From Octopus bimaculoides (Eukaryota), in contig NC_069004.1 in the NCBI RefSeq assembly GCF_001194135.2, positions 12,020,527-12,084,526 on the forward strand: 64,000 bases of DNA, written 5' to 3'. Shown one piece after another: positions 21,655 to 53,785 of this stretch; positions within the stretch are counted from its first letter, which is position 1, and every line of letters starts with the position of its first letter. Position numbers and translations under genes: made by a program. The notes beneath the pieces are model-generated. The model saw only the letters and a list, made by a program, of their open reading frames with translations, made no database searches and had not been told where the DNA came from.

Positions 21655-21890
21655 CCTTATTTACAATTGACGGATATTTGTCCTCATCTTGTTTGTTGTT
21701 TACACAACGTTTCGGCTGATATACCCTCCAGCCTTCATCAGGTGTCTTGGGGAAATTTCGAATCTGGGTTCTCATTCCTAAGGTATTTTTCGATGTTATT
21801 ATTATAATTATTATTCAGGTCACTGCCTGAAATCGAACTTGGAATCTTGGGGTTAGTAGCCTGCGCTCTTAACCACTACACCATATGCCT
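21655..21890 (-). mobile_element. tRNA-headed SINE-like element (H1) with a 3' hammerhead ribozyme motif
   Basis: Minus strand: GGCATATGGTGTAGTGGTTAAGAGCGCAGGCTACTAACCCCAAGATTCCAAGTTCGATTTCAGGCAG (A and B boxes), (AAT)n linker, then the hammerhead motif. Confidence 0.7.
21702..21745 (-). ncRNA. Minimal type I hammerhead ribozyme motif
   Basis: ACAC-CTGATGA-A-GGCTGG AGGGTATA TCAGCC-GAAAC-GT-T-GTGT: stem I ACAC/GTGT, 6-bp stem II, palindromic ACGT stem III, GUU triplet. Confidence 0.7.
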
Positions 21891-37051: not shown

Positions 37052-37861
37052 GATAGCTAGATAGATGGACAAGGTGACTGTAAAATCTAGATACATAGGC
37101 TAAATTTTCAGCATAGTTTCCACTGTTAGTGATGCAAGGTTTAATAGACTTTGCAAGATTCAAACGAACCTGATGCAGTAAACTCTTCATTTCCATCAAT
37201 TGGAATAGATTCATTCCTTCGGATGATTCATAAAAATCTATGATTTTCTCTGAGTACACCTCCTCCAGCAACCCCCAGAAAATAAAGTCGAGGGGACTTC
37301 AATCTGGATGATGCATGAGGGAAGTCAGAAGTGTTGACATGCCCGAATCAGAGGAGATGATTTTTATCAATTTTTGGCAAAGTGTTGGTTATAGCATACT
37401 CAAGAGATTATATGGTGTTATGGCAGTGTTGTTTGACCTCTCTCTCAACTATACTTCAAACTCCATTGATGAATAGTATTTTCAACATGGTTTCTACTAT
37501 TAGAGTTGCAAAGTTTGATACGTGCAAGGTTCACATGCACCTGATTTCCATTCATTCATGATGCATTCCTTCAGATAATTCATATCTATGATTTTCATTG
37601 AGTATTACCCTTCTCCTTCAACATACCCCAGAAAAATAAATCAAAGGTATTAAAATCTGGATGATGCATGAGAAGGTCAGAAGTGTTGATATGCCTGAAT
37701 CCAATGAGATGATTTTTATCAGTTTTTGGCAAAGTGCTGGTTATGGTGAACTCAAGAGATTGTATGGTGGTATGGAGATGTTGTTTGACCTCTTTCTCGA
37801 CTATGCTCCAGCTCTATTACATAATAGTCCAACTACATTGATGAATAACTTTTTCAACATG

Positions 37862-38178
37862 GTGAAGTATATTTGCCACTTAAATGTGGCTGACCCCTAA
37901 GGGTGGAGTCGTACGCTGAAGACGGGAAAATACCCAGAAACTCGAGTCCGTACGTATCGCAGATCAAGATGGGAAAGCTAACTTCCCTTTGCAAATATAG
38001 ACAGGACACAGATGTGTGTCGATAGCCAGCTGGAGGAGATGTTCTCCTGGGGCTAAAAGCAACAGTAACATCCACCCTTAGGCGTCAGCCACATTTAAGT
38101 GGCAAATATACTTCACTTTATCGTGCAGTTACTGTTAATACCTCGTTCAGAGATTTAACATTGTTTTTTTCAACATGG
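37862..38178 (+). mobile_element. Foldback element with 46-bp inverted repeats, an internal hammerhead ribozyme, a ~50-bp asymmetric tail and 13-bp flanking direct repeats
   Basis: IRs 37862-37907 and 38071-38116 (1 mismatch); TTTTTCAACATGG at 37850-37862 and 38166-38178. Confidence 0.8.
37910..37954 (+). ncRNA. Minimal type I hammerhead ribozyme, canonical core
   Basis: CGTACG-CTGAAGA-C GGG AAAATA CCC A-GAAAC-TCGA-GTC-CGTACG: 6-bp stem I, GUC triplet (cleavage after 37948), palindromic ACTCGAGT stem III. Confidence 0.75.
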
Positions 38179-38739
38179 TTTCTACCATCAGAGATTAAAG
38201 TTTGATACACTTTGCAAGATCCAAGTGAGCTCAATTCAGCTACTACACATTTCCATCGCTTTGAGCACATTCATTCATGATGTATTCCTTCTGGTGATTC
38301 GTACCTGTAATTTTCATTGAGTACACCGTCTCCTTCAGTATACCCCAGAAAAAGAAATCAAGGAGACTAAAATTTGGTTGGTGAATGAGGAAATCAGATA
38401 TGCTGAGATGCCTGAATCAGATGATTTTTACCAATTTTTACCATAGTGCTGGTTATGGTGAACGCAGGAGATTGTATGGTGTTATGGGGGTGTTGATTGG
38501 TATATAATGTTCTTAAAAATCGTGGTAGAGACCTTGGTCTCTGGACCACTCACGTCTAGAAACTGAGGTTGGGCGTAAGCTATGAAAATGCCTCATGATA
38601 ATAGCAAAGGAGAATGGGCACCAGCCAGCCCAAAGGTTGGGGTGGATTGCACCTGCCTACCATTCATTCTGCTGAAGAAAAGACAAAAAGAAACAAAAGT
38701 ATTAGTGATGTTTCCCATGTATCCATACTTTATGGGCTC

Positions 38740-40300
38740 CCTGTGTGTGTGTGTGTGTGTGTGTGTGAATATAGTTGTGTGTGTGAATATAGTTGTGTGT
38801 GTGTGAATATAGTTGTGTGTGTGTGTGAATATAGTCGTGTGTGAATATAGTAGTGTGTGTGTGTGTGTGTGNNNNNNNNNNNNNNNNNNNNNNNNNNNNN
38901 NNNNNNNNNNNNNNNNNNNNNNNNNNNNNNNNNNNNNNNNNNNNNNNNNNNNNNNNNNNNNNNNNNNNNNNNNNNNNNNNNNNNNNNNNNNNNNNNNNNN
39001 NNNNNNNNNNNNNNNNNNNNNNNNNNNNNNNNNNNNNNNNNNNNNNNNNNNNNNNNNNNNNNNNNNNNNNNNNNNNNNNNNNNNNNNNNNNNNNNNNNNN
39101 NNNNNNNNNNNNNNNNNNNNNNNNNNNNNNNNNNNNNNNNNNNNNNNNNNNNNNNNNNNNNNNNNNNNNNNNNNNNNNNNNNNNNNNNNNNNNNNNNNNN
39201 NNNNNNNNNNNNNNNNNNNNNNNNNNNNNNNNNNNNNNNNNNNNNNNNNNNNNNNNNNNNNNNNNNNNNNNNNNNNNNNNNNNNNNNNNNNNNNNNNNNN
39301 NNNNNNNNNNNNNNNNNNNNNNNNNNNNNNNNNNNNNNNNNNNNNNNNNNNNNNNNNNNNNNNNNNNNNNNNNNNNNNNNNNNNNNNNNNNNNNNNNNNN
39401 NNNNNNNNNNNNNNNNNNNNNNNNNNNNNNNNNNNNNNNNNNNNNNNNNNNNNNNNNNNNNNNNNNNNNNNNNNNNNNNNNNNNNNNNNNNNNNNNNNNN
39501 NNNNNNNNNNNNNNNNNNNNNNNNNNNNNNNNNNNNNNNNNNNNNNNNNNNNNNNNNNNNNNNNNNNNCATGTATCCATACTTTATGGGCTCCCTGTGTG
39601 TGTGTGTGTGTGTGTGTGTGAATATAGTTGTGTGTGTGAATATAGTTGTGTGTGTGTGAATATAGTTGTGTGTGTGTGTGAATATAGTCGTGTGTGAATA
39701 TAGTAGTGTGTGTGTGTGTGTGTGAATATAGTAGTGTGTGTGTGTGTGTGAATATAGTTGTGTGTCTGTGTGAATATAGTTGTGTGTCTGTGTGACTATA
39801 GTTGTGTGTGTGTATATAGTTATGTTTGTGTGTGTGTATATATAAATATAGATGTTTATGTATGTGTGTGTATATATATATAGATATGTTTCTGTGTATA
39901 AATATAGATATGTATGTGTATATATATATATATAGATATGTTTGTGTATGTATGTATGTGTGTGTGTATAAATAAATATAGATATGTGTATGTATGTGTA
40001 TACATAAATATAGATATGTGTATACATAAATATATATGTGTGTGTATGTGTATACATAAATATAGGTATATGTATGTATGTGTATACATAAATATAGATA
40101 TGTGTGTGTATGTGCATGCATAAATATAGATATGTGTATGTATGTGTATATTTAGAGATGTGTATATATGTATGTGTATATGTATGCAAATGTATGGAAA
40201 TATATATCGTATATGTTATGTGCGTATATATGCGTATGTATGTGTATATATGCGCATGTTTGTGTGTGTGTGAGAGAGTATATGTGTGTGTGTGTGTGTG
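38740..40300. repeat. Minisatellite (GTGTGTGTGAATATAGTT)n grading into compound TA/TG repeats; spans a gap
   Basis: Direct inspection. Confidence 0.9.
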
Positions 40301-41399: not shown

Positions 41400-41720
41400 G
41401 ATGAAACTCACAGCTTATTTTGCTGGGTATGATGGAAAGTGTCAGCTGTCCACAGCCAGCAGACTAAGGTGACACTTGTTTATCGATCATGCTTCAAGAA
41501 CCCTGGGAAGAATTCTTGCAGTTCCAAGCAATGCTGATTTTTGTAGGTGTTCTACCTTCACATTTGTATCAATCTTTTTGAGGCATGTTGGTAGTTGAGT
41601 GCTGATATTTCCAAGTGCACCAATTACTGTTGGTATCACATCTACTCTCTTCATTGACCACAGCCTTCGTATTTCCCACTTCAAATAGTTGTAGTTGTTT
41701 ATTTTTTCTTTATTATTATT
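41400..41720 (-). pseudogene. RLE-type (R4/Dong-like) LINE 3' fragment, subfamily 2
   Basis: YNYLKWEIRRLWSMKRVDVIPTVIGALG...VEHLQKSALLGTARILPRVLEA*; (AAT)n on both sides. Confidence 0.85.
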
Positions 41721-41756
41721 ATTATGAGAAGTACCTGTATTTCTAAGAGCCAGCCG

Positions 41757-41905
41757 TGTCACACTGAATCTATCTCCCTGAGAACTACATTAAGGGTACA
41801 TGTGTCTGTGGAATGCTCAGCCTCTTGCACATTAATTTCACAAGCAAGCTGTTCTGTTGATTGGATCAACTGGAACCCTTGTCTTCGTAACTGACGGAGT
41901 GCCAT
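41757..41905 (+). mobile_element. SINE D 3' module
   Basis: CTCCCTGAGAACTACATTAAGGG...GGATCAACTGGAACCC..GTAACTGACGGAGTGCCA. Confidence 0.7.
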
Positions 41906-42510: not shown

Positions 42511-42853
42511 GTTTATTCTCTTTCAGGAATATATAGCTGTGTTTCTTACATCAGTTTCTCTTTGTTGTGGCTTTTTTGATGTTGTTGTTGTTGTTGTTGT
42601 TTGTGGTGTTAATCTGTTGCATAGATCATATCTAGTGTCAAGTGTGTTGTTTTGTTGTTTGGTGGTTGTGTTTGATGGCTGATGTGTTTGATCGTGTTTG
42701 AGGTTGTGTTGGATGGTGATTGTCTATTCTGAAAAACAGTCACAAGAGAGGTAAGCCCTCTTTATTGCACACCAACACCTTTCAAATCAATTCCATCACA
42801 AATTATTACTACTATTTCTTCTATTAATATTGTACTGCCACTGCTTCTGCTGA

Positions 42854-42891
<38 letters not shown>

Positions 42892-42924
42892 GTAGTAGTA
42901 GTAGTGTTAGTAGTGGTAGTAGTA

Positions 42925-43660
42925 GTGCATGCTTTATTAGTTAGCTGGGATGTTATCTTGAAGTTTGGTTGCAAAATGTCTCCTCCAATCTTGAGAATCT
43001 TTCTTAGAATTCTTGCAGAATTTAAGATTGCACTTTTCTGCAGGTCGGCTATGTGTGTCTCAGTTCCAATATCCTTCAATCTCTTGGGTAGCATTTGGAG
43101 TGTTGTGCCAATTGCACTAATTACCACAGGAATAACTGTTGTCTTAATCTTCCACAAAGAAGGTGCATGGCTCAGTAGTTAGAGCGTCGGGCTCATGATC
43201 ATGAGGTAGTGAGTTCAATTCCCAGACTGGGCTGTGTGTTGTGTTCTTCAGCAAGACACTTTATTTCACGTTGTTCCAGTTCACTCAGCTATAGAAATGA
43301 ATTGCAACATCACTGGTGCCAAGCTGTATCGGCCTTTGCCTTTCCCTTGGATAACACCGGTGGCATGGAGAGTGGAGGCTGGCATGCATGGGTGACTGCT
43401 GGTCTTCCATAAACAACCTTGCCTGGACTTGTGCTCCAGAGGATAACTTTTTAGGTGCCATTCTATGGTCATTCATAACCGAAAGGGGTCTTTACCCTCT
43501 TACCCTAGTTTTCCACAATCTCTTCAACTCTGTGGCTAGATCCTGATATTTTTCAATTTCTTTTTTTTTTTTTCTTTGATTTTTCACTTTCTTATATGCT
43601 ATTGTAAAGTCTTCCACTGTTTATTTATTTTGTCCTCTATAATCACCAACCGAAGCTGCT
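42925..43660 (-). pseudogene. RLE-type LINE 3' fragment, subfamily 3, split by a SINE C insertion
   Basis: EIEKYQDLATELKRLW | KIKTTVIPVVISAIG...IADLQKSAILNSARILRKIL becomes contiguous when 43158-43518 is removed. Confidence 0.85.
43158..43510 (+). mobile_element. SINE family C, full length with TSD
   Basis: 8-bp TSD TTCCACAA at 43150-43157 and 43511-43518; tail (TTACCCT)2. Confidence 0.85.
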
Positions 43661-53029: not shown

Positions 53030-53785
53030 TCAAACGATAAACTTCTGGAAAGTTTTACACATTTTTACAGTTCCAGTGATGGACTGGATCTGCAGTCTTC
53101 GAATTAGCTTTCTCCTTTCTGGTTTTGAGAAGCCTAATTATTCAAGATTGGTATTTAGGCAGTGTATTACATATCCCAGTGCCCCAATAATTACAGGTAT
53201 AAACCTGAACTTGTAATCTGGATAGAGTAACTGCAGATTTCTCAATAGTTCAACATGGTTGTTCTCTTTTTCACTGATCTTCAGCTTTATGTTAACATCC
53301 GCTGGGCAGCTAATTTCCACAACTGTGCACAGTTTCTCTTTTCTATCCCAAATCATTATATCTGGTCTGTTGTGCTTACATTTTACTGAAGTCTTCACTG
53401 ATACATTCCACCAGTATTCCTTTTTATTATGAGTGACTGTGGCTTCTACCATATTGTCGGTTTTTATTTCTTTGTCTCCGGAATTATCCTTCCAATGGAT
53501 TTCATTAGGGAGTGTCCTAGTTACAACGTCATGTCTCATCAGTAGATAATACCGTGATGCCATTTTCGGACAACTGCTTATGATATAGGTGATATCTTCA
53601 GTGTGAACTCCACAAAGTCTGCATCGGTTGTCACATTTTCTTGCTTTCTCTACGTCATTGTCCTTTTTGTGTATCAGGTATTTGGTTGATATTTCCTGTT
53701 CCTGGATTGCAAACGTATACCCTTCAAAGTGGGAGGTAGTAATTCAGCTATTCGTCCATAATAAACTGCTTTGATGATCAAGGTT
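53030..53785 (-). pseudogene. RLE-type non-LTR retrotransposon ORF 3' part (zinc knuckle + PD-(D/E)xK endonuclease), subfamily 4
   Basis: One frame: HFEGYTFAIQEQEISTKYL...CDNRCRLCGVHTEDITYIISSCP..RHDVV...HNRPDIMIWDRKEKLCTVVEISCP...IPVIIGALG..NLE*LGF...ITGTVKMCKTFQKFIV*; one in-frame stop at 53138-53140. Confidence 0.9.

What the first reader, a model, noticed from the sequence alone, without database searches (positions are those of the whole stretch)
37850..38178. Hammerhead-ribozyme-carrying foldback element: candidate new retrozyme-like family
Seen: 46-bp inverted repeats with 1 mismatch (37862-37907 / 38071-38116). Directly inside the left arm is a complete minimal type I hammerhead (CGTACG/CGTACG stem I, CUGAAGA, GGG/CCC stem II with a C.A at its base, GAAA, palindromic ACUCGAGU stem III, GUC). 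The interior has further hairpins (GGGAA..TTCCC, GACACA..TGTGTC, GGAGA..TCTCC). A ~50-nt tail follows; its GTTACTGTT (38128-38136) can pair with AACAGTAAC (38061-38069), giving an alternative fold that encloses the right arm. The whole is flanked by a 13-bp direct repeat and is CpG-rich. Known: minimal hammerheads with palindromic stem III occur in Penelope-like elements and animal non-LTR retrozymes and typically cleave as dimers; DNA-transposon MITEs have TSDs abutting the TIRs and do not need ribozymes. Inference: a small, highly structured, self-cleaving retroelement mobilised through RNA (possibly with circular intermediates). I do not recall such an element being described in cephalopods.
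Basis: partly seen in the sequence, partly recalled or inferred. Interest (0 to 1): 0.85.

Follow-up and report, generated by a model that had tools for sequence, protein, structure and literature searches.

The report
Hammerhead-bearing Penelope-type retroelement insertion
A 302-bp mobile element carrying a small self-cutting RNA motif (a hammerhead ribozyme) has inserted into an old transposon remnant in an octopus genome. Its inverted repeat plus "tail" is the known footprint of Penelope-like retroelements, so it is an ordinary member of a known class that has apparently not yet been written up for cephalopods.

Summary
A paralogous copy of the host repeat 370 bp upstream carries the target uninterrupted. 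So 37864-38165 is a true 302-bp insertion with a target-site duplication (TSD).

The hammerhead is far beyond chance: 2 descriptor hits in the window against 0.01 expected. It matches Rfam Hammerhead_1 end to end but below threshold (20.7 vs 34 bits). Two copies are predicted to fold into a double hammerhead through the palindromic ACUCGAGU.

The "foldback" is best read as an insertion scar, not a new design. Published Penelope-like element (PLE) insertions have four marks: an inverted 5'-truncated copy beside the direct copy, an extra "tail" at one end, a variable-length TSD, and a hammerhead. All four are present. Animal non-LTR retrozymes are now argued to be non-autonomous PLE derivatives, and Penelope elements are recently active in octopus.

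I could not recover a second copy or an autonomous partner, because the tools offer no DNA search of the octopus genome. Truncated PLE versus retrozyme-like monomer stays open, and cleavage is untested. Verdict: a real feature, a new member of a known kind, of modest interest.

The parts
37850..37863 (.). Left copy of the 14-bp target-site duplication TTTTTCAACATGGT
   Evidence: family D5, 100% identical. The target is present once in the paralogous host unit at 37479-37491.
37864..37907 (-). Inverted, 5'-truncated partial copy. It is the reverse complement of 38071-38114/38116. The repeat arm can be read from 37862 if the terminal GT of the TSD is counted as microhomology.
   Evidence: I1, 46 nt, 98%. 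It abuts the left TSD directly. Its outer end corresponds to the position just before the tail of the direct copy.
37908..38165 (+). Direct copy of the element: 258 bp, the hammerhead near its 5' end, no long ORF
   Evidence: The longest sense ORF is 40 aa. One frame is open apart from a single stop.
37910..37954 (+). Type I hammerhead ribozyme motif. Helix I is CGUACG/CGUACG. The core is CUGAAGA ... GAAA ... UC. Helix II is GGG/CCC, flanked by an unpaired C (37923) and A (37936). Helix III is the palindrome ACUCGAGU (37940-37947). The predicted cut is between 37948 and 37949.
   Evidence: descriptor, 0.003-0.01 expected per window; Rfam RF00163 full-length match, 20.7 bits, below the gathering score of 34; the dimer MFE is a double hammerhead.
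38071..38116 (+). Right arm of the inverted repeat. It is the part of the direct copy that was copied in inverted orientation at the left end, and it contains a small hairpin GCCAC-ATTTAA-GTGGC.
38117..38165 (+). 49-nt 'tail': the 3' extension present only on the direct copy, lying between the right arm and the right TSD
   Evidence: It corresponds to the PLE 'tail' described in PMC8557442, PMC3846280 and PMC11167929.
38166..38179 (.). Right copy of the 14-bp target-site duplication
37479..37497 (.). Empty-site paralogue. The neighbouring unit of the tandemly repeated host sequence carries TTTTCAACATGGTTTCTAC uninterrupted.
   Evidence. The units align colinearly across the junction once the insert and one TSD copy are removed.

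Best explanation
The 302 bp at 37864-38165 are one young retrotransposition event made by the reverse transcriptase/endonuclease of a Penelope-like element (PLE). It sits in a decayed, tandemly repeated host sequence of an octopus genome.

Shown: the insert has precise borders, a 14-bp TSD and an empty-site paralogue. It consists of a 258-bp direct copy that carries a complete type I hammerhead, preceded by a 44-46-bp inverted copy of the stretch that lies just before the last 49 nt of the direct copy.

Inferred mechanism: the PLE endonuclease made staggered cuts 14 bp apart, and both 3'-OH ends primed reverse transcription of the element's RNA. The bottom-strand cDNA started at the downstream internal start site, giving the direct copy with its tail. 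The top-strand cDNA started at the upstream start site, which is RNA position 38116, with possible 2-nt GT/AC microhomology. It was aborted after about 45 nt, giving the inverted arm. The two cDNAs were joined at 37907/37908.

The template RNA was uncut at the hammerhead, or was a religated circle, because the copy spans the cleavage site. The hammerhead is of the kind that needs two copies: its helix III is an 8-nt palindrome with no loop. This solitary genomic copy is therefore probably inert on its own.

I cannot tell whether the direct copy is a 5'-truncated or solo-pLTR copy of an autonomous PLE, or a monomer of a non-autonomous PLE derivative (a non-LTR retrozyme). I rate the two about equally likely.
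For: Borders, TSD and empty site. The left arm abuts the TSD, while the right arm lies 49 nt inside it.

Literature:
- A rotifer Penelope has a direct pLTR, a shorter inverted pLTR, a 31-bp tail and a 9-bp TSD. Other copies have TSDs of 8 and 10 bp, solo pLTRs occur, and pLTRs are sufficient in cis (PMC3846280).
- A purified PLE protein cleaves and extends both DNA strands. It starts reverse transcription at two adjacent internal RNA sites, and the spacing between them is the tail. Uncleaved RNA is the main substrate (PMC11167929).
- Hammerheads sit in the PLE terminal repeats, and most genomic motifs are single, in truncated PLEs (PMC4209133).
- Retrozymes are argued to be non-autonomous PLE derivatives.
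- Penelope has 30 recently active families in Octopus vulgaris (PMC13282606).

Hammerhead. Youth of the insert: identical TSD copies, arms 45/46 identical, and CpG observed/expected 0.73 against 0.37.

A metagenomic hammerhead family with the same helix III shows variable 5' truncation, partial tandems and one inverted 3'-end piece abutting a direct copy.
Against: Only one copy could be examined, so variable truncation, variable arm length and optional tail were not observed for this family. No PLE ORF (RT or GIY-YIG motifs) lies in the window. Translations of either strand of the insert found no family relative among 5.8 and 1.8 billion proteins. The only three matches were weak ones to tandem-repeat pseudo-proteins.

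The tail is 49 nt, against the published 30-40. The hammerhead resembles the canonical type I of retrozymes more than the long-helix-II min-HHR typical of PLE pLTRs. It carries an unusual extra A between C11.1 and G12 (equivalently a C.A mismatch at 10.1/11.1), and it scores below Rfam's threshold. Activity is therefore uncertain.
Confidence: 0.75

Rival explanations
1. A distinct new family of foldback retrozymes. In this reading the 46-bp inverted repeat and the tail are integral, conserved parts of the element's RNA (for example a long stem presenting the ribozyme or the RT entry site), not scars of insertion.
For: The arms are nearly perfect, and the whole RNA would fold at -127.8 kcal/mol, z = -9.6. 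A 9-bp pairing brackets the right arm. No homologue of any kind was found.
Against: The asymmetric layout has the left arm terminal and the right arm 49 nt internal. This is exactly what the PLE literature describes as an insertion product. Apart from the arms, structure is near chance. A 46-bp perfect duplex around the ribozyme would compete with hammerhead folding and with dimerisation.
Confidence: 0.12
2. A SINE-like element mobilised by a LINE (RTE, CR1 or Dong-R4, all abundant in octopus). The inverted piece would come from twin priming, and the hammerhead would be a passenger.
For: A 14-bp TSD fits target-primed reverse transcription in general. LINE remnants are present in the window.
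Against: There is no poly(A) or microsatellite 3' end. Twin priming inverts a more 5' part of the RNA and does not duplicate a segment already present in the direct copy (my knowledge of L1 twin priming). Hammerhead, tail and inverted terminal copy together are specific to PLEs.
Confidence: 0.06
3. An ordinary MITE or foldback DNA transposon in which the hammerhead-like sequence is a coincidence.
For: A long inverted repeat, small size and no ORF.
Against: The right arm does not reach the insert's end, since 49 nt separate it from the TSD. The borders are fixed independently by the empty-site paralogue. A 14-bp TSD is atypical for DNA transposons. The hammerhead motif is expected 0.003-0.01 times per window by chance.
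Confidence: 0.02
4. The motif is a decayed or never-active hammerhead look-alike. The element is a retroelement fragment, but no RNA self-cleavage occurs in its biology.
For: The Rfam score is below threshold (20.7 vs 34 bits). Helix II has only 3 bp, with unpaired C and A at its base. The monomer fold is no more stable than shuffles (z = -0.27). PLE hammerheads cleave poorly in vitro, and cleavage is not needed for insertion in vitro.
Against: All invariant core nucleotides, the A15.1-U16.1 pair, C17 and a perfect 6-bp helix I are present. The dimer MFE is the double hammerhead, at -28.9 against 2 x -9.7 kcal/mol. The same helix III occurs in hammerheads that pass Rfam's threshold (L006).
Confidence: 0.25

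Closest known systems
Penelope-like element (PLE) insertions of the Penelope/Poseidon/Neptune type, especially 5'-truncated or solo-pLTR copies
   Same: A hammerhead in the terminal repeat region. An inverted 5'-truncated copy abutting the direct copy. An extra tail at one end only. A TSD of non-fixed length (8-10 bp in rotifer copies, 14 bp here). A 3' end within about 100-200 nt downstream of the ribozyme, as in the Anolis element.
   Different: No RT/GIY-YIG ORF in or near this copy, and no second direct pLTR. The tail is 49 nt against 30-40. The hammerhead has a short helix II and a 6-bp helix I, unlike the long-helix-II, short-helix-I min-HHR typical of PLE pLTRs.
Animal non-LTR retrozymes (Cervera & de la Pena 2020), now proposed to be non-autonomous PLE derivatives (Li, Clavereau & Pollet 2026 preprint)
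   Same: Non-coding. Unit size in the 170-400 nt range. GC below 50% (45%). A type I hammerhead with a 6-bp helix I, a helix II of about 4 bp and a short palindromic helix III that implies dimeric cleavage. TSDs longer than 4 bp when present.
   Different: Retrozymes are defined by tandem arrays and circular RNAs. Here there is a single unit, no tandem copy in 64 kb, and no expression data.
Newt/salamander satellite 2 and Schistosoma Sm-alpha hammerheads (Rfam RF00163, type I)
   Same: The same architecture. Rfam's consensus has helix III as a loopless 4-bp palindrome (ACGCGCGU), matched here by ACUCGAGU. Activity is as a double hammerhead.
   Different: Different sequence family, and extra unpaired nucleotides on both sides of helix II. 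The score is 20.7 bits, below the gathering score of 34.
MITEs / foldback DNA transposons
   Same: Small, non-coding, with a long inverted repeat.
   Different: The arms are not both terminal, the TSD is 14 bp, and a ribozyme and a 3' tail are present.

Membership tests
Hammerhead ribozyme, type I (Rfam RF00163) | Conserved core C3 U4 G5 A6 N7 G8 A9 ... G12 A13 A14, the A15.1-U16.1 pair, and H17 at the cleavage site | tested here: met
   All are present at 37916-37922, 37937-37940 and 37947-37948.
Hammerhead ribozyme, type I (Rfam RF00163) | Three helices around the core, with helix I open | tested here: met
   Helix I has 6 perfect bp. Helix II has 3 bp plus a C.A at its base. Helix III is an 8-nt palindrome without a loop, which forms only between two copies.
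Hammerhead ribozyme, type I (Rfam RF00163) | Score at or above the curated gathering threshold of the covariance model | tested here: not met
   20.7 bits against 34, with a full-length alignment 1-45/45 and E = 0.0029 in a 66-nt search. No hit in the window-wide or 451-nt searches.
Hammerhead ribozyme, type I (Rfam RF00163) | Site-specific self-cleavage | not testable with these tools
   Needs in vitro transcription of monomer and dimer constructs.
Penelope-like element insertion | ORF with a PLE reverse transcriptase and a GIY-YIG endonuclease | tested here: not met
   No long ORF in the insert. No RT or GIY-YIG motifs in six frames of the window. No protein homologue of either strand's translation. 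This is expected for truncated or non-autonomous copies.
Penelope-like element insertion | Inverted 5'-truncated copy adjacent to the 5' end of the direct copy | tested here: met
   37864-37907 is the reverse complement of 38071-38116. Feature as described in PMC8557442 and PMC3846280.
Penelope-like element insertion | Short 'tail' extension present at one end only (30-40 bp) | tested here: met
   The 49-nt extension 38117-38165 is on the direct copy only. It is somewhat longer than the published range.
Penelope-like element insertion | Hammerhead motif in the terminal repeat (pLTR), with pLTRs formed by partial tandems | tested here: inconclusive
   The hammerhead is present. There is no second direct repeat, so a pLTR cannot be defined at this locus.
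Penelope-like element insertion | TSD of variable length among copies | not testable with these tools
   There is one copy only, with a 14-bp TSD.
Non-LTR retrozyme | Tandem repeats of 170-400 bp, each with a type I hammerhead | tested here: not met
   A single unit, with no second copy in the window.
Non-LTR retrozyme | Non-coding, low-GC unit with a type I hammerhead of dimeric type | tested here: met
   GC is 45%. No ORF. Hammerhead and dimer fold.
Non-LTR retrozyme | Expression as linear and circular RNAs | not testable with these tools
   No RNA data are available.
MITE / foldback DNA transposon | Terminal inverted repeats at both ends, each abutting a short TSD of fixed length | tested here: not met
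   The right arm ends 49 bp before the TSD. The borders are fixed by the empty site. The TSD is 14 bp.

The most novel reading that the evidence does not exclude
The insert is a monomer of a cephalopod family of non-autonomous, PLE-dependent hammerhead elements (retrozyme-like). It would multiply through uncut or circular RNA, and would be the first of this type documented in cephalopods. Together with the second hammerhead in the window, which lies next to a possible tRNA-like SINE head, this would mean that octopus SINE-like repeats include ribozyme-bearing families that ride on Penelope machinery.
Probability: 0.35. Interest if true: 0.45.

Novelty: new member of a known kind. Interest (0 to 1): 0.3.

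Why it matters
This locus is an unusually clean natural example of the PLE insertion signature. It has an empty-site control, a TSD, a short inverted copy starting at the tail-less site, and a direct copy ending at the tail site. That fits the two-start-site, both-strands model derived in vitro from a lizard element, and extends it to a mollusc.

It also shows that hammerhead motifs occur in an octopus genome. I found no paper describing them in cephalopods, although octopus repeat annotations list hundreds of unclassified SINE families and active Penelope families. It does not reveal a new mechanism or a new class of element.

Tried and rejected
1. More copies in the window: blastn at word size 7 found only the insert itself.

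2. Copies elsewhere through pseudo-proteins:
- The 76-aa antisense ORF and the 90-aa sense frame were searched against 5.8 billion proteins, with no hit.
- The antisense ORF against 1.84 billion representatives gave three weak hits to tandem-repeat pseudo-proteins.
- One of them, P0031, is my reading of the antisense translation of an unrelated 66-aa (about 198-nt) tandem hammerhead repeat. It matches only over the ribozyme core.
- None of seven window ORFs is in the protein collection.

3. DNA pattern specific for this hammerhead: 0 matches in JGI metagenomes, prokaryote genomes and viral contigs.

4. Generic pattern CTGANGA-N10-20-GAAACTCGAGTC in metagenomes:
- Only two real hammerhead families emerged: Ga0126336/Ga0126342, and the tandem in L006.
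- There was also a chance hit inside what looks like a bacterial coding region (L017, L025, L087), rejected after reading it.
- None is related to the insert outside the ribozyme.

5. Sampling octopus DNA around TE proteins gave only one O. bimaculoides locus (L001) and two non-octopus loci. They contained no copy and no hammerhead.

6. Pfam on the host repeat and LINE-like ORFs gave nothing significant. The Tc1/mariner-like reading of the host repeat therefore rests on my recognition of a ...PDFN.FDLFFWG.LKEK... motif only.

7. I tried to define tail and tail-less ends in the metagenomic comparator family and abandoned it, because subfamily differences blur the 3' ends.

Full report
OBSERVATION. 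The repeat finder reports arms 37862-37907 and 38071-38116, 46 nt, 98% complementary, 163 nt apart. It also reports a perfect direct repeat TTTTTCAACATGGT at 37850-37863 and 38166-38179, which is 14 bp, not 13. The hammerhead reads CGTACG / CTGAAGA / C-GGG-AAAATA-CCC-A / GAAA / CTCGAG / TC / CGTACG over 37910-37954. The predicted cut is after C at 37948.

A REAL INSERTION. The host sequence is a tandemly repeated, decayed fragment. I read it as the 3' part of a Tc1/mariner-type transposase from a ...PDFN.FDLFFWG.LKEK... motif on the minus strand, but Pfam gave no support. The unit just upstream carries TTTTCAACATGGTTTCTAC uninterrupted at 37479-37497. When the 302 bp and one repeat copy are removed, the two units align colinearly straight across the junction. 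So 37864-38165 is an insertion with a 14-bp target-site duplication (TSD). The identical TSD copies, the 45/46 match between the arms, and a CpG observed/expected of 0.73 against 0.37 for the window all indicate a young insertion.

THE HAMMERHEAD.
- Core and helices. All invariant core nucleotides, the A15.1-U16.1 pair, C17 and a perfect 6-bp helix I are present.
- Chance. My descriptor requires CTGANGA, an optional bulge, helix II of at least 3 bp, GAAA, a palindromic helix III segment, U-H, and helix I of at least 3 bp. It finds two motifs in the window against 0.01 expected in 300 Markov-1 simulations, and 0.003 at helix I of at least 6 bp.
- Rfam. Nothing was reported at gathering level or in a 451-nt search. 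In a 66-nt search, Hammerhead_1 aligns to exactly 37910-37954 over the whole model, at 20.7 bits against a gathering score of 34. Rfam's consensus helix III is itself a loopless 4-bp palindrome, so the architecture is the classical metazoan type I. The lost score lies in the helix II region.
- Calibration. A tandem metagenomic hammerhead with the same CUCGAG helix III passes the threshold at 34.9 bits. A clearly real multi-copy family reaches only 19.6 bits against another hammerhead model. A sub-threshold score is therefore weak evidence against.
- Fold. A single 45-nt motif folds no better than shuffles. Two copies have the double hammerhead as their minimum-free-energy (MFE) structure, with an 8-bp intermolecular ACUCGAGU helix, at -28.9 against 2 x -9.7 kcal/mol.
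- Deviations. There are unpaired nucleotides on both sides of helix II. [quoted passage not shown] The A before G12 is unusual. It could be a CpG transition from a C10.1-G11.1 pair, which is my inference. Activity is untested.

WHAT THE FOLDBACK IS. The two arms are not equivalent. The left arm abuts the TSD, and the right arm lies 49 nt inside it. The insert is therefore an inverted 44-46-bp copy followed by a 258-bp direct copy. The outer end of the inverted copy corresponds to the position in the direct copy just before the final 49 nt.

This is the layout published for Penelope-like elements:
- Insertions are highly 5'-truncated, often with an inverted 5'-truncated copy immediately adjacent that creates inverted repeats, and with a 30-40 bp tail at one end (PMC8557442).
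- In a rotifer, a direct pLTR sits with a shorter inverted pLTR, a 31-bp tail and a 9-bp TSD. Other copies have 8- and 10-bp TSDs, solo pLTRs occur, and pLTRs suffice in cis (PMC3846280).
- The purified Anolis PLE protein cleaves and extends both strands. It starts reverse transcription at two adjacent internal sites of the RNA, and the sequence between them is the tail. It mostly uses RNA that the hammerhead has not cut (PMC11167929).
- Hammerheads lie in the PLE terminal repeats, and most genomic motifs are single, in truncated PLEs (PMC4209133).

MECHANISM (inferred). Staggered nicks were made 14 bp apart. The bottom strand primed cDNA from the distal start site, giving the direct copy with its tail. 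The top strand primed from the proximal start site, RNA position 38116, with possible GT/AC microhomology, and stopped after about 45 nt. The two products were joined at 37907/37908. Because the direct copy spans the cleavage site, its template was uncut or circular.

Apart from the arms, the RNA is not notably structured.

ORGANISM AND CONTEXT. A LINE-like ORF in the window has its best named relatives in Octopus bimaculoides. A 20-kb O. bimaculoides locus shares dispersed repeats with the window at 80-92% identity. Penelope elements are abundant in coleoids and have about 30 recently active families in O. vulgaris. No PLE ORF lies in the window.

RELATIVES. I could not reach other copies, because no tool searches eukaryotic genomes by DNA. 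The protein-based work-arounds and the pattern scans found nothing related. A generic scan for hammerheads with the same helix III gave a multi-copy family in two metagenomes. Its copies start at different 5' points, form partial tandems, and in one locus have an inverted 3'-end piece abutting a direct copy. That is the same insertion style.

RIVALS.
- MITE: excluded for this copy by the internal right arm and the 14-bp TSD.
- LINE-driven SINE with twin priming: does not explain the duplicated inverted segment or the lack of a LINE-type 3' end.
- Truncated autonomous PLE (solo pLTR) versus monomer of a non-autonomous PLE derivative (non-LTR retrozyme): open. The canonical-type hammerhead and the 258-bp size lean towards the retrozyme. 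The single, non-tandem copy leans the other way.

VERDICT. The feature is real and correctly observed. It is a new member of a known kind. No paper in the searchable library describes hammerheads in cephalopods, so this may be a first record, but an expected one.

Noticed in passing
window 21702-21745 (minus strand); possible tRNA-like stretch about 21889-21817 (minus strand): A second hammerhead motif of the PLE 'min-HHR' type: ACAC CTGATGA A GGCTG...CAGCC GAAA CG TT GTGT, with a bulged A after A9, a G10.1-C11.1 pair and a palindromic CG helix III. It lies about 70 nt downstream of a stretch I read as having tRNA-like A and B boxes, which ARAGORN and Rfam do not call. It sits beside a copy of a dispersed repeat I recognise from memory as the abundant octopus SINE. 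This may be a ribozyme-bearing SINE-like element.
   Followed up: partly
window 37100-38500: The host of the insertion is a tandemly repeated (about 370-720 bp spacing), decayed fragment. Its minus-strand translation (...HHPDFNTFDLFFWGMLKEKG...) looks like the C-terminal part of a Tc1/mariner-type transposase. Pfam gave no significant hit.
   Followed up: partly
window 38711-38871 and 39570-39730, flanking the N gap 38872-39569: The same sequence (CATGTATCCATACTTTATGGGCTCCCTGTGTG..., followed by the GAATATAGTTGTGTG minisatellite) occurs on both sides of the assembly gap. This is probably a gap-flank duplication artefact of the draft assembly.
   Followed up: no
window 53141-53743, 42765-43178 and 41490-41789 (all minus strand): ORF fragments that I read as the C-terminal part of a LINE-type retrotransposon protein (...RPDIMIWDRKEKLCTVVEISCP..., ...VIPVVISAIGT...LQKSAILNSARILRKILK). 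The first has its best named relatives among Octopus bimaculoides 'uncharacterized proteins' at 67-74% identity. No Pfam domain was found.
   Followed up: partly
protein P0031 (534 aa, from the representative library): A 'protein' made of 66-aa tandem repeats. I read it as the antisense translation of a roughly 198-nt tandem repeat carrying a hammerhead core, that is, a retrozyme-like satellite mis-called as a gene. It matched the query only over the ribozyme.
   Followed up: partly
loci L019, L021, L029, L032, L054, L057, L058, L068, L074, L088, L101, L112, L122, L123 (metagenome Ga0126336) and L091 (Ga0126342): A dispersed, multi-copy, roughly 1-kb non-coding element. It carries the hammerhead GAGCAA CTGATGA GGTTC ACTGAAG GAACC GAAA CTCGAG TC TTGCTT. 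Copies have variable 5' ends, partial tandems (L021, L029) and an inverted 3'-end piece next to a direct copy (L058). It presumably comes from a eukaryotic host in those samples.
   Followed up: partly
locus L006 268-309 and 930-971: Two identical type I hammerheads 662 bp apart, with the same CTCGAG helix III. Both pass Rfam's Hammerhead_1 threshold (34.9 bits), so this is a tandem retrozyme-like repeat in a metagenome contig.
   Followed up: no
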